The notes beneath the pieces are model-generated. The model saw only the letters and a program-made list of their open reading frames with translations. It did not search any database and was not told the origin of the DNA. From Podarcis liolepis (Eukaryota): a stretch of 64,000 bases of DNA. Below, one piece after another: positions 30,070 through 53,421 of the stretch; the stretch's first letter is position 1; the number at the start of each line of letters is the position of its first letter. The DNA lies in NCBI GenBank assembly GCA_965112155.1, contig OZ218102.1. One strand, 5' to 3'. A program made the position numbers and the translations under genes.

Positions 30070-30700
30070 TTAATAAGTGGGCCGGGGCTCGCAGTTCGTG
30101 TAAGCGGCCTCTCCCGGGTGAGGTGACGGAGAGTTACTGGGTGGAGTCGGGATGCCGCTGGCCCCTGAGCTCTGACACACGTACCATTCGCTCAGGTTGG
30201 CTGCCGCCTGGGTGGAGGAAGCCGCTGCGGGAGGTGGTGGTGGCGGCGGCGGCGGCGGCGGCTGAGGGGGCTCCCGGCCGCAGTCCGACGACGGCGACAC
30301 CAGCGACGGGGTGGACGACTCGTAGCCCGAGCTGGGAGGTGGGGACTTGCAGTGGACTTTCATGTGCTTCCGCAAGGAGCTGGGGTGCGTGTAGGACTTG
30401 TCACAGCCTCGCACTTTGCAGTTGTAGGGCTTGTCGCTCGTGTGCACGTGGGAATGCTTCTTCCTGTCGCTGCTGTTGGCGAAGCGGCGCTCGCAGCCTT
30501 CGAACTCGCATTTGAAGGGCTTCTCGCCTGCAAGGAAAAGAGGGAATCCAGGGAGACTTTGCGTAAAGGACCAGGGTGGGGAAAGGTGCGGGTGTGCGGG
30601 TTTTATTGGGGTGGCGGGGTGGCGTGTCTGCAGGTCACAGGTTATTGAGCGATGAGCTCTGTGTCGCCCTCGCCCCACCTCGATTTCCCAGCAGTGGCCG
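29930..30700. promoter_or_regulatory. Intragenic CpG island over the ZIC4 last coding exon
   Basis: GC and CpG content are visibly much higher than in the flanks. Confidence 0.6.
30070..30527 (-). CDS. ZIC4: ZIC4 second coding exon (ZF4-ZF5 and C-terminus, read-through form ending ...EWYVCQ...PRPTY*)
   Basis: Acceptor cttttccttgcAG|GC; [74 protein letters not shown]... The KKHSH and CKVRGCDK residues are ZIC4/5-type. TAA at 30072-30070. Confidence 0.94.
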
Positions 30701-34415: not shown

Positions 34416-35449
34416 TTGGGTTGTAAGGATATCTTACAATAGGATTATGTCGTTTTCCTGGGAGTTTATAAGGCTGTGGAGTGTGTGTGCAAAAAACTGC
34501 ACAGTGGAACGGATTTAATTTTCCAAAAGGGCTTATTTATTATCTTCTGGTGTGTGTGAGAGAGAGAAAGAGAGTCGGATAGGAAGGAATGGAGTGGAGA
34601 AGGCAATAAAAAGCTAAGAAGACCGGCTGCTAAACTAACTCTCTACAACTTCACAGGCTGAATTTGGAAGTCTGAAAACTTTATACCGCCAGTTTCATTC
34701 ATTCACCACAGATGCTTCTGTGGATTCCGAGGTCAAAGAGGGTGTTGGCAAGGTCTTCCCCTTCAAATAACTTTCCTTTCTGTCTTAACGAGAAATTGTA
34801 CCTATTTCTGACAAAAATTCCCTTCATAATTCTGGCCAATGACCGTTCAAAAAGAACATGCTAGGAAGACAAAATTAACTCCAAGCACACACCACTACTC
34901 CCCTCTTTCCTTCCCAGGTTCCTAAAGAGCACCTTCCCATATTTCAATCTCCGTAGCACTTTAAGAAGGAAAAGGCTCTTACGAAGACTTGGGATGAAAC
35001 ATCGCAGGGTTCCTCGTACAAAACAAAAAGAGGGGACCTTGCAGCTGTGCTTTTCTCACAAGGAAGGCGGCAGAAGCAGCATCCCAGCAGCATCACTCAA
35101 AACTGCCTAGACAAGTTGCAACTTCCATTGTTCGCTCCTAATTTGCGAGCTTGCATCAAGATTGGATGCTTTTCCGTCTCTATAGGGCTTTTTAACTCTC
35201 CCCTCTCCAGGAAATCCCGATCTAAATCATGGAAGACCTTTCTTGCATACGCACATACACATACACGTCAGCATTATGCATCCACACACGCCTCAATTCT
35301 TCAAACGAAAGACAACAATCAAAACAAACTATTGATCCGGTCTTCATTGGCTAGTATTAATTCTATGTAGCGGGCGGGGGTGGGGGAGATCGCACATGCA
35401 GCAGATAGTTGAACAAAACACGAATGAAGAAAGACCTTTCCATACTGAC

Positions 35450-35702
35450 CTGTGTGCGTCCTTTTGTGGATTTTGAGATTTTCCGAGCGAGCGAAGACTT
35501 TCCCGCATCCCGGGAAAGGACAAGGGAAAGGTTTCTCCCCCGTGTGGACTCGGATGTGGTTGACCAGTTTGTATTTGGCCTTGAAAGGCTTCCCTTCTCT
35601 GGGACACTCTTCCCAGAAGCAAATGTGGTTGGACTGCTCCGGCCCTCCAACGTGCTCCACGGTGACGTGAGTCACCAGCTCGTGCATGGTGCTGAAAGTT
35701 TT
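35450..35702 (-). repeat. Inverted-repeat arm in ZIC4 (partner of 52064-52316)
   Basis: Same alignment as the ZIC1 arm. Confidence 0.95.
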
Positions 35703-36638
35703 CGAGCATAATTTTTTGGGAGTCTGGTCCAGTTCGATCCACTTGCAGATGAGCTCCTGCTTGATGGGCTGCCTCATGTAGCGGAAGAAAGCCCCAGGGC
35801 CGTGGTGTGGAGCTAAATTCACGTTCAGGTTCATGCCACCGTAGCCGTGGAAGGAGGAAGCAGCAAAAGGATCTGTCCTGGAGACTGGTACTGGCGTGAA
35901 AGGTTCAGACCTGGCATACATTTCTCCAGGTAGCCCCAGCCTTATCTGTCCGTTTAGATGGCCACCTGGAGCTGCATGGGGAGGTTGCTCATGGTGGAGT
36001 CCAGTAAAAAGCGAGGGAGTTCCGGCTTCTGAGTGGTGGTGGTGGAGGTGGTGGTGGTGGTGGTGAGCATGGTGTCCGGGGTAGCTACCTGTTGTTGAGA
36101 CAAACATTCCATGGTGAGAACCTGTAGCAGCAGAGTGTTGATAAGGGAGCCCTGGCATGACTGGGGCTGTCAGATCTCTGCGCAGGAAGAATTCCCTACC
36201 TGATGAAAGAGCATGACTTGGGTGAGGGACTGCGTAAGGGACTGTTGTTGACTGCGTCGGGCCAAATGCTCCCGCTGGACTGGGTACCACCTCGGCTTGG
36301 CCTGTCACAGGATGGTGGGGATGAGGCTGAGGGGCAGGGCTGAGCTTAAGGGCCGCTGAGTGATGAGGAGGATGAGAGTGGTGGCGGTGGTGATGATGAT
36401 GATGGAGAGGATGGTAGTGGTGCCCCATGTGTTCTGACCGGAATGGACTCAGCCCGAGGCGGCTTTCTGCAGCGTACTCCCCAGGGTGCGTGGGAACCAT
36501 GGAGTGGGGATGCCCGGCGAAGCCTGTCATGCTCTGAGGGGAGTGGTGATGGTGGCGGTGATGACGATGACGAGGAGCCCCTGCCAAGCCTAGTAATTTC
36601 AGCGCCGTGTTCCGTTTGGAGAGTGAAGCAGAGTCCAT
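35450..36638 (-). CDS. ZIC4: ZIC4 large coding exon (long His-rich N-terminus, ZF-NC, ZF1-ZF3)
   Basis: ATG at 36638 (gtaATGG, good Kozak context) opens [15 protein letters not shown]... The exon includes [38 protein letters not shown]-type sequence and ZF1-3, and ends at a phase-1 donor ACAG|GTCAGT at 35450/35449. Head-to-head position with ZIC1 is the known ZIC4 arrangement. Confidence 0.93.
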
Positions 36639-37049
36639 TACTGGGCTCCCCCAAAGCCTCCAAGCTCTCCTGGTTCTACTACAATTCTAAAAAGTCACCT
36701 GACGCCGAGGAGGGGGGAGCGAGGGAGAAAGAGGAAGAGCGAAAGAGCGGTGGAAAAACTTTTTTGAAAGTCCCCCCCCCCCACCCGCAAAGAAAAAAGG
36801 TTTTTCCCCTCCCTCTCTCTTGGTCTGGACTATTTGGCTTTGTTTTGTTTTTGCTCCCCGCTCCCCCCCTTCCCCTTTCTTTTCTCCCCCTCCTCTTCCA
36901 TTATTTTGTGTGTGTGTGTGTGTTTCCTCCTTCCTTTTTTTTTTTAATGCCTACGTGGAATCCCATACGCTTTGAGAAGCAGCAGCAGGACGCTGGGAGG
37001 CTACTGAATAGCGCTTCACAGACTAGGCTCCAACCCAGAGAGCTAAACA

Positions 37050-38240
37050 ATCAGGGCGGTCGCTGATTGGCCCAAGCTGCCTGACCGAAGTCAGCGCTGA
37101 CAGGTCCCCGCTGAAGTCTGAAAAGATTTAGGAAGGGGTAAAGGGGCGGGGAGGGAGGAAGAGGACTCAGGAAGCAGTGCGCCTGCGCTGCGTTTGTGGA
37201 TAATCCCCCCCCCCAAGCTCCTTCCCTTTCTCCTCCTCCTCTTCCCCCTTTGCCCCCTCCCTCTCTAGCCCTAACCAGTGCGCCGAGCTTGTCCGGTGTT
37301 TGCATTTACTCCCCGCATTTTGTTTTTATCTGCGTTTAACTGATTAAGGGCCGCTGGAACCGTCTTCCCCAGACGAAATGAGGGGTCCTCCGAGTCGTTT
37401 ACGCGCTAATGAGCAGTGGTTGCCAAAGGAGGAACAAGGCCTTGAGCAAGCGGCGGCAGCAGCTCCTGGGAGCGCCGGGGAGGCGAGGCTGGCCGGCGGG
37501 TGGCTGTTGCTTTCTCCCCACCCCTTCCAAAGACGCTTTGGTTGTCCCCGATCATCTGCTTAGAAGAGCCAGGCGCTTGGAGGTATCCTGAGTGATCTCC
37601 TGACTCCTGCACGGCTTGGATCGTGGCTCAAGCCCCTTCTGCTTTCTGTTCTCCTGCTAGCCTCCAACCATTTACACACACACACACACACACACGTTCT
37701 CCTTCCACACCCAGCCCTGTCTCTTTTTCTCACTTAGCCTCGTAATGAGCAGACGATTTAATGGAGAGCTCAGATCGGTGTCTGCTTCGGGGCGGACTGC
37801 CTGATTGGCCACCGAGCAGCTCATTGTGGACTAACCAAAGTGCGATTCTCAACTCCCTTCCAGTTTCCTTCCTGCAAGAGCAACAACAAAGATGGAGAAG
37901 GGGCGGGAGGGGAGGAAGGTAGCACACATCACACAGGGACTTTCACAAAACTTCCGCTCTCGAGGGACAGGGGAGCGGGGGGGGGGGGCGAAATACGGCT
38001 AGGCCAAGCCGCCGCAGAAATCAGCAGGGAAGGAGGTAGGGAGGAGAGAGACTGCCCGGAGAAGGTCTGCCGAGACGTAGCAAGCTCTCCTCCGTCCCCT
38101 TTCCCTGCCCTCACAATCGCCCAGATTATGAATGAATCCGAAAGACAGGAGACGCGCGGGGCTTTCTGAGACCGCCTCATAAATTCCTTTGCCTACGACC
38201 CACCATTGTAGGAAGTAGAGAAGCGCGCAGGTTTGTTACC
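37050..38240 (-). promoter_or_regulatory. Proximal ZIC4 promoter region (CpG-rich, CCAAT and GC boxes)
   Basis: CTGATTGGCC (NF-Y box facing ZIC4) at 37063-37072 and 37801-37810, GGGGCGGGG at about 37143-37151, and CpG enrichment 400-1500 bp upstream of the 36638 ATG. Confidence 0.6.
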
Positions 38241-41200
38241 AGGCCTGTTTTGGGCCAGGAGCAAAAGTCTAGATTATTTTCTTTAAAGCAATACAGCGAT
38301 GGTGGTGGACCCCAAACCCCGGGCCAGGCAAGATGCTTTCGAGGGATCCAATCCTACACACACACTACCTCCACCCTCGCTTCCTAACCTCCAGCCCAAC
38401 CGCGCCATCAATTTGACTGCTGATTATTTATAGCACAGACAAATCTCCGGGACTCCCGTCCCCAACAGAAATGGGCACAATGTGGAAGAGACAGGCTTTG
38501 CATACAGAAGTCGTCCTGGGAAGCGGAGCTGGGCAGCTAGGTATTTAGATTTCTGACACTGGTTGGCGGCCCAGAGAACCAGACCTTTAAAACAACAACA
38601 ACAAAGGCTAAAGCTCTGCCACATCTTTCATTTCCCACGATTACACGACATTTATGTCCCCCTCCCTTTAAAAGTAATACAAAAAAGTCATACCTAATAC
38701 CTGCAATTAACTGGCGCGTATAACCCAATCCAAATATTGCAAATCATTTCAAAATGCTTATGCAACTAATAAGTCTCTGACCATCTGAAGCAGCCCTGGA
38801 TGCGTGTGAAACATCGTGTTGAATCCCTTTGCCTCTCCCTGTCAAACGCAATCGCCCACATTCATTTATAAGGAGCAATTAAAAGATCAAGTCAATTTAA
38901 AAAGCAACCTGTAGATTAATAGATAAATCTATCGGACGTTATGATGCTCACATTTGCTCACTGTCAAAAGGAAAATAAACCGATTGCAAGTGTACTGTAT
39001 CCGTGATGAAAATAAAAGTATAGAGTTTATTATTTTTACCCCCACCCAAAAAAAAAAGTCATTGAAAGCCCTTCCAATAAATGCTGGAACCCGATATTAC
39101 TGAATTCAGGTAATTCTGTTCTCCTCCATTTAGTGGGATAATATCAAAATTCGGCCTTGAACTCTGGACCTAAACTCCTAAACGTAAAAGTTACTTTAAG
39201 TATACCCACTTTCTGCAGAAGGGCAGCTTTCAATGTTACTTAAAATCCAGTAAGAAACACGGCAATTTTGAGAATGTTTTCCCCCACTGAACAAGCAGCA
39301 TTTTTTACTTTTAAATGACATCCTGCGAAAAGAGCCCTTTATTTTTATTTTATTTTTAAAAACTGAACCATTTGGGCAAAAGTAAAATGCAAAATCGACA
39401 CGTACTTTTAAAATAATATTCTTTCTCGCTTTCTGTCCCGTGTTAATAGCTGCACAAGTGATGTCCTGAAACCGAAAGCCGCTCTTAAGTTACTTGTGGT
39501 AATGCCCTGAGTATTAGTGAGGTCAGTGTTATTAAAGATGCAATCACAACACTCACTTGAGAGTAATCCCAACTGAATTCAGTGGAAGTTCCGAGAAAAC
39601 ATGCATAGGATGGGCTTTAACTCATTTCAGATGCAAAACTAGGCGGTGAATTAAAAGTGTCCCCCCCTCAAAGGAAGTCACATATTAAAGGAGAATAACA
39701 TCATTTCTCGGGATACAGAACTTCAGTTTCAAGAGTAAATATTTCTTTCTCTCATCATCGCAAAATTTACATCCTGACATACAGTAAATAAACTATCTGA
39801 AGCCGCACTGAACTCTTACAGCTTTTCCACCACTATCCCCTCTCCCCCCCAAAAATATTTGAACTTTTTGTTTTTATTTTTTAAAAGCAACGTTTAGCTA
39901 TAATGTTGAAACAGTTGCCAGTCACTGCATTTTAGAGAAATCACCCCGGAGACAGACCTTAGCAAACATCAAAACAATTTCTTGGGATATTCTAAAGTTG
40001 CTAGCTAAATGTTGTTTTTGTATGCTTGGGAACAACAATTCCCGACTCAGGCAATTGCCAATCAAATTTACGTAAAGCAGAAAAATAGGAGCCTGCCTGC
40101 TATAAAATATTTTTGAATTGCTAAATCGTGGAATATTGAGTTCAAGATGTACGACATGCATAAATAATTATCTAAGAAGCATCTCATTACACTTTATACC
40201 ATAGCGGGAGTTATAGTCTTGTTTTTGACCATTTTTGTACAGATCACAATACTGAGGATAAAATAAAAGGCAGCTAAATCGGTATTTATTATTGTATGAA
40301 TGTAACGCGCGCGCACACATTGATGCCCCGAGGACCTGAAAAGTTACACATGCTGTAATTAACTAGCTCTCCTTACGTAACATGTTTATGTAGACAACTT
40401 AAACCCCCCAGTAGTTCAAGACGACCTTCCCTTGCCAGTTTCTTCGCCCTAAGCCAAAAACATTTCGTCTTTTCCTTCCTCATCCCTGACCATCTCCGAA
40501 GAAGATCACAGAAAGAAAGAAACGTTATCGGAAGCAGGACTCTGGAAGGCTGTTACTTACAAAGGTACTGAGAGTGTGACTTCCAAATAAAGCTGTTTTC
40601 CTCATCCCTCCTTACAACCACTTCACCTCTACACTCTTGACATCCTTCAGTCCTGACAGTCCTCAGTCAAGGGAGAAAACATCTGGAACAGTTTATCAAT
40701 ATATATATGTTACTATCGGTTGGCTTAGGCCATTCTAAAATATTGGCATGGCTTCTTGTCAAACGCTAATGGCTTTATCCGCTCTTACTTAAAACCCTGA
40801 GGTTCCTCACAGGGGTTTCCCCCCCTTGTTCCCCCCTCTGCTTGCATGAGTCCAATGGAAAAGAAATGGCCCATGGTGTCTCTCTCATTATATTAGGTGA
40901 AGTTAGTGCTCTCACTCCTAGCATTTGTTGTGTACCTTGGGAGACATATCTCTGTGCGTGCGTGTGTGTGTGTGTGTGTGTGCGCGCGCGCGCATAAAGG
41001 AGACAGAGCAGACAAGTGAGGGAGGGTGGTGATGCAGATGGAGCTGTACACATGACCAGAAGGCGGAGGAAACAGAACGAGGAGGGCCTGAACAAAGTTG
41101 CAGAGTTATCCAGGAGACTTGCATCTGCGATGCAGCTCTTACCTGTCTAATGTGCGCTTTTCTTTGTGGTTCCCTCAGTGTGTGTGTGTGTGCGCGCGCG

Positions 41201-43974
41201 CGCGCGCGGTTCTATATATTGAGTAGATAAAACGACCAGAAGAGCAGAATAGCTCACCCTTCCACAAATAAACAAATCGGGATGGCAGGGACTCCCCGCC
41301 TTATATTTTTAAACTGTCATGGCCCTCATGGACGCATTCCACTTCTAATATAAATACTGGAGCTGAGGAACTTGATGACAAGGAGAGCTGCACTTTGCAA
41401 GAATAACGCCCAGCCCAGTTGCGTTAGCATGGCCACTAGCCAAAAGCAGAATCTAGACTCCCCAAAGGCAATAAGACTGTTTGGTTACTAGCTCCATTGG
41501 ACTACTGCTGCTGCTGCTATTAGCTTCCCACCGGAGGACCGCAGCCGCATACGGCGTGGAAGAGACAATTAGAAGTCCTTGCACGTTTGTCCACAAAATG
41601 TTTTGCGGATCGCAGTTTCTCCCCCTACTGACTGTCCTGGACAATGTGGCCCAATTGTAAAGTATTGGCAAGATGCCCTTTACTCACAGAGCCCAGTTAA
41701 GTCCACCTATTGGGACTATGTAAGCGGGTTTCAATGAGATTGCTGCGGCTTAACTGTCTTGTGAACTGGTTTGAGGATCCTAACAACTTGAACACCGTGG
41801 CCCAGTGGTTTGGGGGGGGGGGAATCACAGACTTGCCCTGCCAGACAGTTAGTAGGAGAGAGATGAGGTTTGTTGAAGAAAAACCCTCCTATTACGCACA
41901 CACAACCACATTGACAGCACCTACTAATAACCATTGAAAAGCTGAACAAATGACAATTGACTTCTTCCGTTTCAGGTTTTGCTTATCATAGCCTAGGAAA
42001 TAAATGCGTACCAGAAAGTAGGCAGCAAAGCAGCCATTCTGCCCTCTGTCTCCCACTGACACCAGCGACAATTATGTCTGCTTAAGTGTCGGCAGGATTG
42101 CCGCCCAATGGCGTGTTCTGTTGCTTCCAGTGACCTCAGGCACGAACTGGAAAAGATGTGGTTAAGATTTCTGCATAAGAGAAACCACAGTATTATTTCT
42201 GTAGGTTGGAGATTCAGCAGAAATCTGTTGTGGGAAGGAGATTTACACTCCCCCCTAAAAAATACCTTCTCGATCAGTTCCAAGGATCAACAGCCTAAGA
42301 GTCTGAGGTGCTTTTTTGCACTCTAAACTCAGATATAATCACATTTGTAGTTTATATTATCCTATCTTCCGCAAGGAATAGATTACATTTCTGCATAAAC
42401 ACGACACCTGGCTGATTTCCCCAATAAATAAGTAAATACAGAATGGAAGAGTGTAAGCTTTTTTAAAACAACAACAACAAATAAATAAATAAACTTCCTG
42501 AACTTTAGAGCAATCATCTGGTCTTATACGCTGCCAGTATTTTCTTTACCCCATCTCTTTAACAGAGTTTATTAGGCTGTATCTGCTAGCAGAATCTGAC
42601 CTTTAGCTTTTAGTTAAAACAGCCAGATTCTCTGGGCGATTGAGACTCGCAGAAACTTTTTTCGCGTTTTCTATGTCTGTCTCGCTGAAGGGTCATTGAA
42701 TCAGTGTAGGGAAGTGGTGACCTTTCCGAAGAAGGTCTTCACTGCTTATGAAGAAGGAAAGTCTTGTGAATAAGGGATTTCTATGCAACTCTACCCCTTC
42801 CCACTTCAAAAATCGCCTGTAAACGCAAATCTTCAGGGTGCACTACGGACATTGTCGCCTTAATTCGAATAGCAGCGTAGGAATTCATAGGAAAAGGAAC
42901 CAGCCCGATAAGAGGCTTCCTTAAACTGAAATATACGGGTGCAAGACTTGTGTCGTGCACATGATTTCGAGGGAAACAATCCATTTAAAACCCAAGTTAT
43001 CTGGGGGATTAACTGAGTTGTTGATGGGCTGTAAGAGAATAATACAGGGGGAAGCCCGTGTTTCCTGATCATCTATTCAGCATTTAGGCAGCCGGGAGAC
43101 TTAAGAGAAGGGACGGAATTCACCAAAATCAAGAAGAGCCACGTGGAAGGATTGGTGAAGAATCGCCGCAAGATAATGATGAGAATTAAACGTGAACCCT
43201 CCCTTTTATTCAGGAAGGTATTGGCTCAGAAAATATGACGGAAAATACTGATGTAAAATAAAGGAGAAATTCTGTATCTCCCCCCCTTTTTAATATGACC
43301 TGCCTTTTATTGCTGAAAACTAATGTCTAACTGGGCTAAGCTACAGGAAAGGATGACAAAGCAGGTAATAGGTAGAAGGTAATGACCAGTTGTGAAGATG
43401 GGATGGCTCCAAATCCTCTTCCTCCCACCAGTTCAGAACTTGAATTACTGAAGATCAACCCAATCAAATGTTTATTTCAAATGGAATACTTAATATAGTG
43501 CCCCAGATTAAGGTATTCCTGTCAGATAAGATGTCAATCAATGCCCTACTTAACTCCTCGCATGGTGGAAGTTGGGTAGCCAGCACATTGTGGAAAGCTG
43601 GTATACCGGGTAACGATGATACATATCATGTAAACCCCATCGCCAAGATCAAAGCTTTCTTCTTTAATAGGATCCAATACATGTCAAACCTCATTCCAAT
43701 CAAATCGCCCGTAAATTAATGCAAGATGAATATGTCATAGAATAATGTGACAATGCAATCACAGAGGGTCAGGGGTTGTTGTTTCAATGAGAGAGTTGTC
43801 AAATATTAATTCTAGAACCTCCAAATGAATAGGCAGAGAGCAGGATTAAGCGCTTGCTGGTGGGACCTTGTGTGGCTGATTTGCGTTCATGCAAGCAAGT
43901 TAAACACTATAGGGGAGGAATCATATATTGTTTTTGGGCTTTTTTTTTTTTAAGAAAGTCATATTTTAACTTAC

Positions 43975-44059
43975 TTGACTGTCCCAGAAGGTTTCTGTAA
44001 AGTCGTTTTCTTTTCCTCATTACAAGGGTAACCTTGTGCCTTATTTTCTAACTTGGTTC
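43975..44059 (-). CDS. ZIC4: Candidate 85-bp upstream ZIC4 exon (coding part 44020-43975: MRKRKRLYRNLLGQS) for a short isoform
   Basis: Acceptor ccacttttctctcctgaacAG| at 44060/44059 and perfect donor CAA|GTAAGT at 43975/43974. Translation IRHKVTLVMRKRKRLYRNLLGQS closely resembles the mammalian ZIC4 N-terminus as I recall it ([23 protein letters not shown]). Its phase 1 matches an internal acceptor at 36089/36088. Confidence 0.8.
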
Positions 44060-47543: not shown

Positions 47544-47810
47544 CCCACTCCACCTGTTGAAGCAGAGATCCCCTCATTTCTGCCTAGCATGTCAGAACTG
47601 ACCAAAAAAAAGAGAAGAAAGTCGAAAGACAGAGGGAGACGAGAGGAGAGGCTGGGGGTGGGGGTGGGATAGAGGGGGTAGGGTGGGCAGCGGTTGGATC
47701 AAACAAAACCAAAACACCTCTTGGGCGACTTCATCGAGGCGGTCATCCTTCATTTCTTCTTTTCTTGCTTTCTGGGAGCAGCTGGGGATTGTATGGAGAG
47801 GCAGAAATGA
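47544..47810 (-). other. Candidate non-coding first exon of the short ZIC4 isoform
   Basis: Perfect donor GGG|GTAAGT at 47544/47543 on the minus strand and a TATA-like CATATAAG near 47835-47842 (minus). The 85-bp exon has an acceptor, so it needs an upstream exon. The TSS is only estimated. Confidence 0.4.
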
Positions 47811-47959
47811 ACCTTCAGGATGATATTTTAATGGCTTATATGTCACGTTGGTGCATGTGGCTTTGAACTGGAGCAGCTTTCGTTTCCTGCAGAGAGCATG
47901 CCGCAAATCCCACTTGATAACTTCTGCAGCCCACAACACTTGCACACAGAGCGCGCGCA

Positions 47960-48007
<48 letters not shown>

Positions 48008-49676
48008 TGGACTTTATATCTGAGCATGTTCCCAACAACAAACAAACAAACAAACAAACTTTGGACTGTACCCTTCCGCGGTTGTTGACTCTTGAGATGG
48101 GGTTAAGTGTTGCTCTGCATTTTGGAGAGGCGAATCTATTCCCTTTTGCTAACTTCAAGTATGTGTAGATTATTCTCTCTGGGACCAAACTTTCCTGAGA
48201 TTCTTGCCCGTGGCTCTGGAATTAGGCATACTAGAGCGAAAGGGCGAAAGAGCGAGATCTCATTACATATACCAAGTCTAACACATGAAAACTCTTTATA
48301 TTCCTTATCAAGGGAAGATGCTTCAGACCTGTTGCTGTAGGACCTTAGATGTGTGCTTGTATGTATGCATGTGTGTATGTGTTTGTATGCGTCTGTGTAC
48401 ACACACACGCAAACATTGTGTGTATGCGTGCGTGCGTTTGTGAGTGCAAGCCTTCTTTCATGCAAGCAGCATTACCTCCGCTATCGGTCAGAAACTATGA
48501 AGCCGTGCTAATAGAACTGCCCCGAATACCCTCCTTTATGCATTGAACCTACTCGGAAATCTGATATATAGTATTACACTGCCGAATGGCAGTAAAAAGG
48601 TGGTTTTTGTTTTACTTAAACCAAACAGTGTGCCCCCCCCACACATTTCACTGAAATATACAGCTCTGAAATAGGAAATATTTTTCGTGCACTTTTATCT
48701 GCCAAGGGAATTGATTCCTAACTCCTTTAATATAAAACAGGATAAATCAGGTTGGGGGAAAGTCATAGCGAAGTCACATAAAGGCTGGACAAAGGTTCAA
48801 AACCCGAAGGGCTTTGATTTCTAGTTAACATTTATTAACATCCCTCTCCCTCTCCGTCTAACACACAGGCTTACATTTTCTGTATTGGGGTTGGGGATGG
48901 TCCAGGTTAAAATATTATTATTATGTGGTTTTTTTTAAAAAAACAACAACAACTAAAAACACTGTTCTCAGCAAAACGCACTCTTTCTCAAAACTACACG
49001 GGCATCACAGGGAATAACATACCCAAGTTGCTTTGCTTAATTGATTGAGTCACAATGATTGTCTCTTTTTAAGTAACCATACTTCTACATCTCGACAATC
49101 ATTTTAATATATAGTCAATGGGTCTTTGTAACAGGAACAAAGAAGAACTATCCGTAGTTTTTCAATAGACTTGAGTTGGGTAAAGGCAGGTTAATCGAGG
49201 GGTTGCATNNNNNNNNNNNNNNNNNNNNNNNNNNNNNNNNNNNNNNNNNNNNNNNNNNNNNNNNNNNNNNNNNNNNNNNNNNNNNNNNNNNNNNNNNNNN
49301 NNNNNNNNNNNNNNNNNNNNNNNNNNNNNNNNNNNNNNNNNNNNNNNNTCAGCAACAAAGGCGCCGCCTGCTTTTTCCACCGTCCTGGTGTGGCAAGTTG
49401 AGGAATTTCAATAAATGTGACAAGGGTGACTGATTTGTGAACTAGAAAAGGTTTGAGCGTCAGAAAATTTATATTGCTCCTATCTAGTGAGGATTTCAAA
49501 TACATTATAAAACCCCAGGATCCAAAAGCTCCATGCAGCACAGAAGAGACAAAAGCAACTTTGGGGGGGGGGGATACAGTCTTTTTTTTTTTTTACCTGA
49601 ATGAAAGAGGTCGCGTAAAAAAGAAAGAAAGAAAAACAAGAAACAAAGTGCAAGGAGATACATAAACAACACTATA

Positions 49677-50149: not shown

Positions 50150-52438
<2,289 letters not shown>

Positions 52439-53421
52439 TAGGGAATAAATATAGGGGTGGGGGGCTCCTTTCTTAAACAAATCCACACCAAGAGCCGGAT
52501 TCAGTTCAGCTGGTGAATTAATTGGCACTATAAACCAAACATTGCTTTTCTTTTTCTTTATTTTTTTAAGTGGGAAAAATCAAATATAAGGTAGGGCTCT
52601 AAATGTTTCAGGGAAAAAGGGGGAGATTAGGGTGTGGGGTGGAGGGGAAAAGATGGCAGCGATCTGAATTGTTAAAATTTATTGGTTTTAATTAATTGGT
52701 AGTCGAGGGCACTGACTGTCTTACAGTGAGAAATCCTGCTAAATATATGGCTACCTAACCTCAGCTTTCCTTGCTATCTATTTCTCACCCTCTGTAAATA
52801 TTTAATTATGTGGGGCTATTGTAAGTAATCTGAGCTGTACGAGTTTATGTATTATTACAAGGAAACGTGGGGGCTGGGAGCGCTGAAATCACTCGCAAAT
52901 CACCAGCTCCCTGTTCTAATATTTCTTGTGTTGTCTTTTCCTTCTCCCTTTCCTTTTGGAAAAAGAAATCCCACAACCTGTCGTGTGTTTATCTAAATTT
53001 TTTTTTAAAAAAATCTAAAGCTGGCGCTATTGTGATTTGAACAGTTTAATACACTGCAAGTTTAATAACTAATACTACTGTGCAGCCGTGGAAGGTTATG
53101 TGTACACTACGTAATAAATAAGGAAAGGAAGGGAAGGTAAACAAACGCCAAATTTAGCCATAAAAGTGGCAACAAACCTTCTCTTCCTTCCAAAACTGTG
53201 TGCAAATGTACTCCTTTGCCAGGCGTTCATTTTCTGGTGAGATGCCACAGTTCGCTGTTTAAAAGAAAGATAAGAAAAATGGGGAAAGAAAACAGGCTTT
53301 GATTTAATTTACTCTTGTTCAGTAAAGTGGGGGTTAGAATTGGCTGTAGGTGTTGCTCCATACTATAAAAATCTAGGTGCCAGATTTCCAATTAGGTCGA
53401 CTTTGTTTGTTTTTGTAATAG

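What the first reader, a model, noticed from the sequence alone, without database searches (positions are those of the whole stretch)
36088..44059. ZIC4 appears to keep two alternative N-termini: an 85-bp exon splices into an acceptor inside the long coding exon
Seen: an exon missed by the ORF track (44059-43975, minus; pyrimidine tract + CAG acceptor, A|GTAAGT donor, phase 1) encodes MRKRKRLYRNLLGQS. Inside the long ORF, tgtttgtctcaacaacAG|GTAGCTAC (36089/36088) is a phase-1 acceptor. Joining them gives ...GQS-S-SYPGHH... in frame (380 aa versus 548 aa for the long form). From memory, mammalian ZIC4 starts [30 protein letters not shown] and lacks the long His-rich N-terminus of fish and frog Zic4. 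Inference: this reptile retains both forms, so 36638-36089 is coding exon in one isoform and intron in the other. That could be the intermediate state explaining the short mammalian ZIC4. The RKRKR peptide could act as an added NLS.
Basis: partly seen in the sequence, partly recalled or inferred. Interest (0 to 1): 0.85.

Follow-up and report, generated by a model that had tools for sequence, protein, structure and literature searches.

The report
ZIC4 alternative N-termini, already annotated
This lizard's ZIC4 gene can encode a long and a short protein start through two promoters and a splice acceptor inside the long first exon, but the same isoforms are already in public gene models for its closest relatives and most other amniotes, so it is real but ordinary.

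Summary
The 85-bp exon (44059-43975, minus) has a pyrimidine tract and CAG acceptor, an ATG at 44020 and a TCAA|GTAAGT donor. The phase-1 acceptor caacag|GT sits at 36089/36088 inside the long ZIC4 ORF. By arithmetic the two forms are 380 and 548 aa.

It is not new. NCBI models of the closest relatives carry every variant. Podarcis muralis and P. raffonei have long forms (N-terminus 181/183 identical to the window), a form that skips the ZOC-like motif, and a short form starting MRKRKRLYRNLLGQSSSYPGHH. Zootoca vivipara X2 matches the window's short-form pieces at 99%.

Long and short forms are also modelled in other squamates, turtles, birds and marsupials. Only eutherians lack the long ORF. 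So this is the general non-eutherian amniote state, not an intermediate held by this reptile.

The same acceptor also ends a 111-nt in-frame internal intron (36199-36089) that removes the ZOC-like motif. That variant is modelled from gar and coelacanth to marsupials.

Expression in this animal was not tested. The NLS idea is untested.

The parts
47718..47936 (-). Distal 5' exon (1a) of the short-form transcript. The 3' end is defined by the donor caagag|gtgttt at 47718/47717; the 5' end and TSS are not mapped. It holds the start (ATG 47753) of a 15-codon upstream ORF, MKDDRLDEVAQE|EPS*.
   Evidence: Sequence. tblastn: emu model P0041 aligns over 47936-47715 at 84% translated identity (E 5e-57). 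Pogona X3 MKDGHLDGVAQE|ESNQK and Hemicordylus X1 MKDDRLDGVAKE|EPAQE place the same junction.
43975..44059 (-). 85-bp exon 2. It has a cag| acceptor, the TAG of the upstream ORF at 44050-44048, the main ATG at 44020, and the donor TCAA|gtaagt. It encodes MRKRKRLYRNLLGQS plus the first base of a Ser codon.
   Evidence: sequence; 16/16 identity to Zootoca X2, and conserved in turtle, bird and marsupial short forms.
36970..37118 (-). Conserved stretch upstream of the long-form ATG, probably the proximal promoter or 5'UTR. It contains a CCAAT motif (gggccaatcagcg). The TSS is not mapped.
   Evidence: sequence; 77-88% translated identity to the read-through part of the Gekko japonicus model P0134.
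36089..36638 (-). Long-form-specific coding part (aa 1-183, His-rich, with the ZOC-like REFFLRRDL). It is intron in the short form.
   Evidence: conserved in ZIC4 from shark to marsupial, E 8e-81 to 1e-13; 181/183 identical to Podarcis raffonei X2.
36089..36199 (-). Internal in-frame intron of 111 nt (37 codons). Donor tcatcag|gtaggg at 36200/36199; it uses the same acceptor at 36089/36088. Its removal deletes REFFLRRDL...[10 protein letters not shown].
   Evidence: sequence. The junction ..SSG|SYPGHH is modelled in Podarcis X3, and the equivalent junction in python, turtles, marsupials, frog, coelacanth, gar and teleosts.
35450..36088 (-). Exon part shared by all forms (SYPGHH... through zinc fingers 1-3). 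Donor ACACAG|gtcagt at 35450/35449.
   Evidence: PF18366 zf_ZIC, E 4.7e-27, on window 35592-36638; 164/165 identity to Zootoca X2 over 35592-36086.
30070..30527 (-). Last coding exon (zinc fingers 4-5 and the C-terminus). Acceptor ccttgcag|GC at 30528/30527; stop TAA at 30072-30070.
   Evidence: sequence; 149/151 identity to Zootoca X2.
51293..52441 (+). ZIC1 exon 1 ORF (context). It is divergently transcribed, about 3.4 kb from ZIC4 exon 1a.
   Evidence: the ORF translation reads [13 protein letters not shown]... and includes the ZOC motif [10 protein letters not shown].

Best explanation
The window holds the ZIC4/ZIC1 head-to-head locus of a lacertid lizard. ZIC4 is built to give three N-termini that all converge on one 3' splice site at 36089/36088. 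(1) A proximal promoter just upstream of 36638 gives the ancestral long protein of 548 aa, with a His-rich N-terminus and a ZOC-like motif REFFLRRDL. (2) The same transcript can lose an in-frame 111-nt internal intron (36199-36089), which removes the ZOC-like motif and gives 511 aa by arithmetic. (3) A distal promoter near ZIC1 gives exon 1a (ending at 47718), then the 85-bp exon (44059-43975), then the acceptor at 36088. This yields a 380-aa protein starting MRKRKRLYRNLLGQS-S-SYPGHH that lacks the first 183 residues. In this transcript a 15-codon upstream ORF ends 24 nt before the main ATG. Shown here: the sequence features, their reading-frame compatibility, and their homology to public gene models. 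Inferred: that all three are expressed in this animal, and that the forms differ in cofactor binding or trans-activation because ZOC and His tracts modulate ZIC activity. The codons MFVSTTG double as the pyrimidine tract and acceptor, which may explain why eutherians keep them after losing the long ORF.
For: The splice signals and frames are read directly from the sequence. The long N-terminus is conserved in ZIC4 models of squamates, turtles, birds, opossum, amphibians, lungfish, teleosts and shark. The short N-terminus is modelled in gecko, Anolis, Zootoca, Podarcis, Hemicordylus, turtles, birds, marsupials and eutherians. In Podarcis muralis and P. raffonei all three N-terminal variants are modelled from one gene, and the long N-terminus is 180-181 of 183 identical to the window. 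The window's short-form pieces are 99% identical to Zootoca X2, XP_034989329.1. Exon 1a and its junction are placed by Pogona X3, Hemicordylus X1 and bird models. The ZOC-skipping junction is present in models from gar to marsupials. It is also in a Logan-derived 403-aa protein on a 1278-nt contig (P0122), which is too short to be genomic.
Against: The comparative evidence rests mostly on predicted (XP_) models. Some of these could be propagated by protein homology rather than transcripts. Relative abundance, tissue specificity and the two transcription starts are unknown. A functional difference between the forms is pure inference.
Confidence: 0.82

Rival explanations
1. Only the distal-promoter short form is made in this lizard. 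The long ORF upstream of 36088 is a not-yet-decayed relic, as in eutherians.
For: Eutherians show that the long ORF can be lost while the acceptor is kept. No transcript data from this species were obtained.
Against: The 183 codons are open. They are 180-181/183 identical to Podarcis, about 80% identical to tegu and skink, and 48-60% identical to shark, fish, frog and opossum. That pattern indicates purifying selection on a protein. The upstream 5' region is also conserved with gecko. Long forms are modelled in all sampled squamate families.
Confidence: 0.05
2. Only the long (and ZOC-skipping) forms are made here. The 85-bp exon is conserved sequence that is not spliced to 36088 in this species.
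For: The acceptor has a modest pyrimidine tract (tgtttgtctcaacaacag). The junction was not observed in RNA.
Against: The acceptor, donor (GTAAGT), ATG and frame are all intact. The peptide has been conserved for the whole of amniote history: MR.KT.LVMRKR.RLYRN in turtles, birds, marsupials and eutherians. The form is modelled in three lacertid species.
Confidence: 0.06
3. The short exon is used mainly as part of a non-productive or regulatory transcript. The upstream ORF from exon 1a and a weakly translated main ORF would make the distal transcript tune ZIC4 or ZIC1 expression from the shared intergenic region rather than supply protein.
For: In this lizard an upstream ORF (ATG 47753, TAG 44050) precedes the main ATG by 24 nt. 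The distal exon lies about 3.4 kb from the ZIC1 ORF start, in a conserved region.
Against: The peptide encoded after the ATG is conserved at the amino-acid level across amniotes. It is the only N-terminus of eutherian ZIC4, which is a functional protein. In Pogona, Hemicordylus and birds the upstream ORF is fused in frame to the main ORF.
Confidence: 0.07

Closest known systems
NCBI RefSeq models of ZIC4 in lacertid lizards: Podarcis muralis X1-X6 (XP_028587064.2, XP_028587066.2, XP_028587068.2, XP_028587069.2, XP_028587070.1, XP_028587080.1), Podarcis raffonei X1-X4, Zootoca vivipara X1/X2 (XP_034989328.1, XP_034989329.1)
   Same: They have the same gene and the same three N-terminal variants. 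The long form is 548-559 aa, with the first 183 residues 180-181/183 identical to the window. The ZOC-skipping form reads ..HALSSG|SYPGHH. The short form starts MRKRKRLYRNLLGQSSSYPGHH. The window's short-form pieces are 99% identical to Zootoca X2.
   Different: The only differences are His- and Pro-repeat lengths and a few substitutions. The window's own species was not identified. These are predicted models, not experimentally characterised isoforms.
Eutherian ZIC4 (short protein starting [29 protein letters not shown])
   Same: It has a homologous small coding exon and the same acceptor position (S|SSGHH versus S|SYPGHH), and the same head-to-head arrangement with ZIC1.
   Different: Eutherian models lack the long His-rich, ZOC-like N-terminus. 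Read-through models keep only ..LFVSTTG before the acceptor. The eutherian start is 8 codons further upstream; the corresponding codon in this lizard is ATA, so translation starts at the second Met.
Long Zic4 of fish, amphibians and shark (for example the Scyliorhinus, Bombina and Brienomyrus models)
   Same: The His-rich N-terminus, the GRDF[FL].RRDL motif and [10 protein letters not shown]|SYPGH are conserved. A ZOC-like motif in Xenopus Zic4 was noted by Layden et al. 2010 (PMC2988786).
   Different: They begin MSVDALGSPVMDP.... Squamates have lost that first Met: the window has WGSPVM preceded by an in-frame stop at 36689-36687. No MRKRKR-type short exon was seen in their models, but this was not searched specifically.
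ZIC1-3 (subclass A) ZOC box
   Same: A short N-terminal motif of the RDFL.RR type lies in the same relative position. In the window, ZIC1 has [10 protein letters not shown] and ZIC4 has [10 protein letters not shown].
   Different: The literature classes ZIC4 and ZIC5 as lacking the ZOC box (PMC7403390). The ZIC4 motif is divergent, and no binding of a ZOC partner has been shown for it.

Membership tests
ZIC4 orthologue | Divergent (head-to-head) pairing with ZIC1 | tested here: met
   The ZIC1 exon 1 ORF lies at 51293-52441 (+) and later ZIC1 exons near 53.3-53.7 kb. ZIC4 lies on the minus strand from 47.9 kb down to 30.07 kb.
ZIC4 orthologue | Zic-type zinc-finger domain, and best matches named ZIC4 | tested here: met
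   PF18366 zf_ZIC, E 4.7e-27. The top hits are all named ZIC 4; the ZIC5 hits are far weaker (E 3e-6 and 3e-4).
Amniote short ZIC4 isoform (small MR.KT.LVMRKR.RLYRN exon joined to the acceptor inside the long exon) | Homologous small coding exon upstream on the same strand | tested here: met
   tblastn: 44020-43973 is 16/16 identical to Zootoca X2, 78% to Gopherus X7 and 65% to Monodelphis X5.
Amniote short ZIC4 isoform (small MR.KT.LVMRKR.RLYRN exon joined to the acceptor inside the long exon) | Intact GT-AG signals and compatible phase at donor 43975 and acceptor 36088 | tested here: met
   TCAA|gtaagt and caacag|GT, both phase 1.
Amniote short ZIC4 isoform (small MR.KT.LVMRKR.RLYRN exon joined to the acceptor inside the long exon) | The junction is present in RNA of this species | not testable with these tools
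No indexed RNA run holds the exon.
Long ancestral ZIC4 form | Open, conserved His-rich N-terminal ORF continuous with the zinc-finger exon | tested here: met
   183 codons are open. E 8e-81 to 1e-13 against ZIC4 from squamates to sturgeon and shark. 181/183 identical to Podarcis raffonei X2.
Alternative-promoter gene | Two separate transcription start sites | not tested
   The evidence is indirect only. The 85-bp exon has an acceptor, and exon 1a lies 3.7 kb upstream of it. The region upstream of ATG 36638 is conserved with gecko. No CAGE or read data were available.
In-frame internal intron (exitron-like) removing the ZOC-like motif | GT-AG, a length that is a multiple of three, and a junction seen in relatives | tested here: met
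   CAG|gtaggg...caacag|GT, 111 nt. The ..AG|SYPGH junction is in Podarcis X3, Liasis, turtles, marsupials, Ascaphus, Latimeria, gar and teleosts, and in the transcript-length Logan contig P0122. Use in this species was not tested.
ZOC-box Zic proteins | RDFL-RR type motif in the N-terminus (relaxed definition of Layden et al. 2010) | tested here: inconclusive
   The window has REFFLRRDL. It resembles but does not equal the consensus. PMC2988786 admits XlaZic4 only under a relaxed definition, and PMC7403390 states that ZIC4 lacks ZOC.
Monopartite nuclear-localisation signal | A basic cluster K-(K/R)-X-(K/R) that is shown to drive nuclear import | not tested
   RKRKR fits the pattern by eye. No predictor or assay was available. 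Eutherian orthologues have RKRLR or RKRIR.

The most novel reading that the evidence does not exclude
ZIC4 may carry an ancient, regulated on/off switch for its ZOC-like N-terminal module. One acceptor, whose pyrimidine tract is the invariant MFVSTTG codons, receives three kinds of donor: none (full form), an internal donor built from the Gly-Arg codons that open the ZOC-like motif (skipping form), or distal 5' exons (short form). Eutherians would then have fixed the 'off' state by losing the long ORF. On this reading, the textbook statement that ZIC4 is a ZOC-less subclass B protein describes a eutherian derived condition. I found no paper in the searchable library that states this.
Probability: 0.45. 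Interest if true: 0.35.

Novelty: already known. Interest (0 to 1): 0.15.

Why it matters
For genome annotation it matters little, because the isoforms are already in RefSeq for sister species. For ZIC biology there is a modest point. Functional work on ZIC4 uses the eutherian short protein, and reviews class ZIC4 as lacking the ZOC box (PMC7403390). Most vertebrates, marsupials included, are modelled with a long ZOC-like-bearing form, a form that splices the motif out, and in amniotes the short form too. If these forms differ in cofactor binding or trans-activation, results from mouse and human ZIC4 would not transfer directly to chick, reptile, frog or fish, and the eutherian loss would be a datable simplification.

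Tried and rejected
1. Read evidence. The look-up of sequencing runs found no holder on record as RNA.

Splice-site conservation at the DNA level and dN/dS could therefore not be computed. Conservation was judged from protein models only.

3. Joined model. Each exon was compared by reference, and lengths were obtained by arithmetic.

4. Decayed long ORF in eutherians. Read-through models keep only LFVSTTG before the acceptor. One sheep model (P0082) shows a faint N-terminal resemblance (E 0.044 among 29 sequences), which is too weak to claim.

5. Literature. Six searches found no paper on ZIC4 N-terminal isoforms or their evolution. One search was a syntax error.

6. Age of the short exon. Whether it predates amniotes was not tested: 15 aa is too short for the protein search tools. 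Zebrafish X2 and other models use different 5' exons into the same acceptor.

7. The bacterial promoter/terminator scanner was not used because it does not apply to a vertebrate gene.


Full report
WHAT IS AT THE COORDINATES

On the minus strand the window reads ...ccacttttctctcctgaacag|GAACCAAGTTAGAAAATAAGGCACAAGGTTACCCTTGTA ATG AGG AAA AGA AAA CGA CTT TAC AGA AAC CTT CTG GGA CAG TCA A|gtaagt. This is an 85-nt exon (44059-43975) with a good acceptor, an ATG at 44020 and a consensus GTAAGT donor in phase 1.

The long ORF listed at 35319-36638 begins with ATG at 36638. It contains atgtttgtctcaacaacag|GTAGCTAC, with the exon resuming at 36088, the second base of codon 184. The long exon ends at ACACAG|gtcagt (35450/35449). 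The last exon runs from ccttgcag|GC (30527) to TAA (30072-30070).

I did not build or search the joined sequence; each exon was handled by reference.

WHICH GENE

ZIC1 exon 1 is on the plus strand at 51293-52441, with later ZIC1 exons near 53.3-53.7 kb. The minus-strand gene has a zf_ZIC domain (PF18366, E 4.7e-27), and all its strong matches are named ZIC 4. This is the ZIC4/ZIC1 head-to-head locus.

The species is a lacertid lizard. The window's pieces are 99% identical to Zootoca vivipara ZIC4 X2, and the long N-terminus is 180-181/183 identical to Podarcis.

THE LONG N-TERMINUS IS ANCESTRAL AND CONSERVED

Residues 1-183 match ZIC4 models of squamates (E to 8e-81), opossum (1e-44), birds, turtles, amphibians, lungfish, bichir, teleosts and shark (3.5e-24).

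Squamates start at the second ancestral Met. The window has WGSPVM before [10 protein letters not shown], with an in-frame stop at 36689-36687, where other vertebrates read MSVDALGSPVMDP. A stretch at 37118-36970, upstream of the ATG, is conserved with a read-through Gekko model. This fits a conserved proximal promoter or 5'UTR.

THE SHORT N-TERMINUS IS THE AMNIOTE-WIDE SHORT FORM

Proteins starting MRKRKRLYR...SSSYPGHH are modelled in Heteronotia, Anolis, Zootoca, Podarcis, Hemicordylus and Phrynocephalus. MRHKT[SP]LVMRKRKRLYRNILEKSSSYPGHH is modelled in turtles and birds. [29 protein letters not shown] is modelled in marsupials. [29 protein letters not shown] is modelled in eutherians.

In tblastn against window 35592-64000, these N-termini land on 44020-43973 or 44047-43973, with E from 5e-14 to 2e-8. 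The codon that is the first Met in turtles, birds and mammals is ATA in this lizard, so translation starts at the second Met.

BOTH FORMS, AND A THIRD, ARE MODELLED FROM SINGLE GENES IN THE CLOSEST RELATIVES

Podarcis muralis has X1/X2 (559/549 aa, long), X3 (522 aa..HALSSG|SYPGHH), X4 (511 aa, long with a short C-terminal variant), X5 (389 aa, MRKRKRLYRNLLGQSSSYPGHH) and X6. P. raffonei has X1-X4, with X2 at 548 aa, exactly the length computed for the window. Zootoca has X1/X2. Anolis X1/X2, Pogona X1-X3, Gopherus X2/X7, Mauremys X2/X6, Monodelphis X1-X7 and Dromiciops X1-X3 show the same duality.

It is the general state of non-eutherian amniotes, marsupials included, and not an intermediate preserved in this reptile.

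THE THIRD VARIANT

The same acceptor closes an internal intron. The donor is tcatcag|gtaggg (exon end 36200, GT at 36199-36198). The intron is 111 nt, or 37 codons, in frame. It removes [37 protein letters not shown], which includes the ZOC-like motif.

The ..AG|SYPGH junction is modelled in python, turtles, a bustard, marsupils' sister groups aside, in marsupials, Ascaphus, coelacanth, gar and many teleosts. It also appears in a Logan-derived 403-aa protein on a 1278-nt contig, which must be a transcript. The donor GT is made by the Gly-Arg codons that open the motif. The tegu model has Asp there (PSD|REFF), so the tegu probably lacks this donor.

THE DISTAL FIRST EXON

The 85-bp exon has an acceptor, so a further exon must exist upstream. 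Bird models (P0041, P0049, P0045, P0052), Pogona X3 (MKDGHLDGVAQE|ESNQKIRCK...) and Hemicordylus X1 (MKDDRLDGVAKE|EPAQEIRH...) place it at 47936-47718, with the donor caagag|gtgttt. This stretch is 84% identical at the translated level to the emu model (E 5e-57).

In this lizard the frame from ATG 47753 runs into TAG at 44050-44048. That makes a 15-codon upstream ORF ending 24 nt before the main ATG. In Pogona, Hemicordylus and birds it is fused in frame to the main ORF. Exon 1a lies about 3.4 kb from the start of the ZIC1 ORF.

EUTHERIANS

Models that read through the acceptor keep only ..[AS]LFVSTTG|SSSGHH and then diverge completely. The MFVSTTG codons are the pyrimidine tract and AG of the acceptor, which can explain why they survive. 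A sheep model shows a faint resemblance to the ancestral start (E 0.044). I do not build on it.

WHAT COULD NOT BE DONE

No indexed RNA run holds the exon.

Expression in this animal, the two transcription starts and DNA-level splice-site conservation therefore remain untested.

LITERATURE

The held library has no paper on ZIC4 N-terminal isoforms or their evolution. PMC7403390 classes ZIC4 and ZIC5 as subclass B proteins lacking the ZOC box, and it shows that ZOC and His tracts modulate ZIC3 trans-activation. PMC2988786 notes a ZOC-like sequence in Xenopus Zic4 under a relaxed definition. PMC5997157 mentions an intron 3 of human ZIC4 facing ZIC1, and PMC10807796 reports many ZIC4 isoforms in human cerebellum.

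VERDICT

The feature is real, and it is a member of an already annotated set of ZIC4 isoforms. The evolutionary reading needs correction: the loss of the long form is eutherian, not mammalian, and the reptile is typical rather than intermediate.

The most interesting residue is the single acceptor serving three N-terminal choices, which together act as a possible switch for a ZOC-like module. That switch is conserved in models from fish to marsupials and seems not to be discussed in the open literature.

Noticed in passing
window 36089-36199 (-): An in-frame 111-nt internal intron (donor CAG|gtaggg at 36200/36199) uses the same acceptor as the short form and removes the ZOC-like motif. The equivalent junction is modelled from gar and coelacanth to marsupials and in Podarcis X3. 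The tegu model has Asp in place of the Gly codon that supplies the GT.
   Followed up: yes
window 47718-47936 (-) and 44048-44059 (-): The distal non-coding first exon is 84% identical (translated) to an emu model. A 15-codon upstream ORF (ATG 47753, TAG 44050-44048) ends 24 nt before the short-form ATG. In Pogona X3, Hemicordylus X1 and several birds this frame is open and fused to the main ORF.
   Followed up: partly
window 36639-36689 (-): Squamate ZIC4 has lost the ancestral first Met (MSVDALGSPVM...). The window keeps WGSPVM in frame, with a stop at 36689-36687 and no upstream start, so translation begins at the second ancestral Met.
   Followed up: partly
window 36970-37118 (-): The stretch upstream of the long-form ATG, with a CCAAT motif, is conserved (77-88% translated identity) with the read-through 5' part of a Gekko japonicus model. 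It is probably the proximal promoter or 5'UTR.
   Followed up: partly
window 30183-30190 (-): GAATG|gtacgt lies inside the EWYV codons. Many relatives' models end ...ANLSE (Pogona X2, Monodelphis X3, Podarcis X4) or continue ...SCTAAIVGAGIL (Podarcis X1, X3, X5, X6). This fits use of the donor with downstream exons, which is the subject of another note on this window.
   Followed up: no
proteins P0071, P0075, P0078, P0089, P0093, P0096, P0097, P0111, P0120 (eutherian models): Eutherian read-through models start inside the former long exon and keep only LFVSTTG before the acceptor. P0089 sits on a 1781-nt Logan contig, so transcripts from a proximal start seem to persist in eutherians.
   Followed up: partly
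window 47960-48010 (-): A long (GT)n microsatellite lies immediately upstream of the conserved distal exon.
   Followed up: no
window 31.37-31.59 kb, 49.2-49.5 kb and other N runs: Several N stretches lie within the locus, inside ZIC4 intron 1 and in the ZIC4-ZIC1 intergenic region.
   Followed up: no
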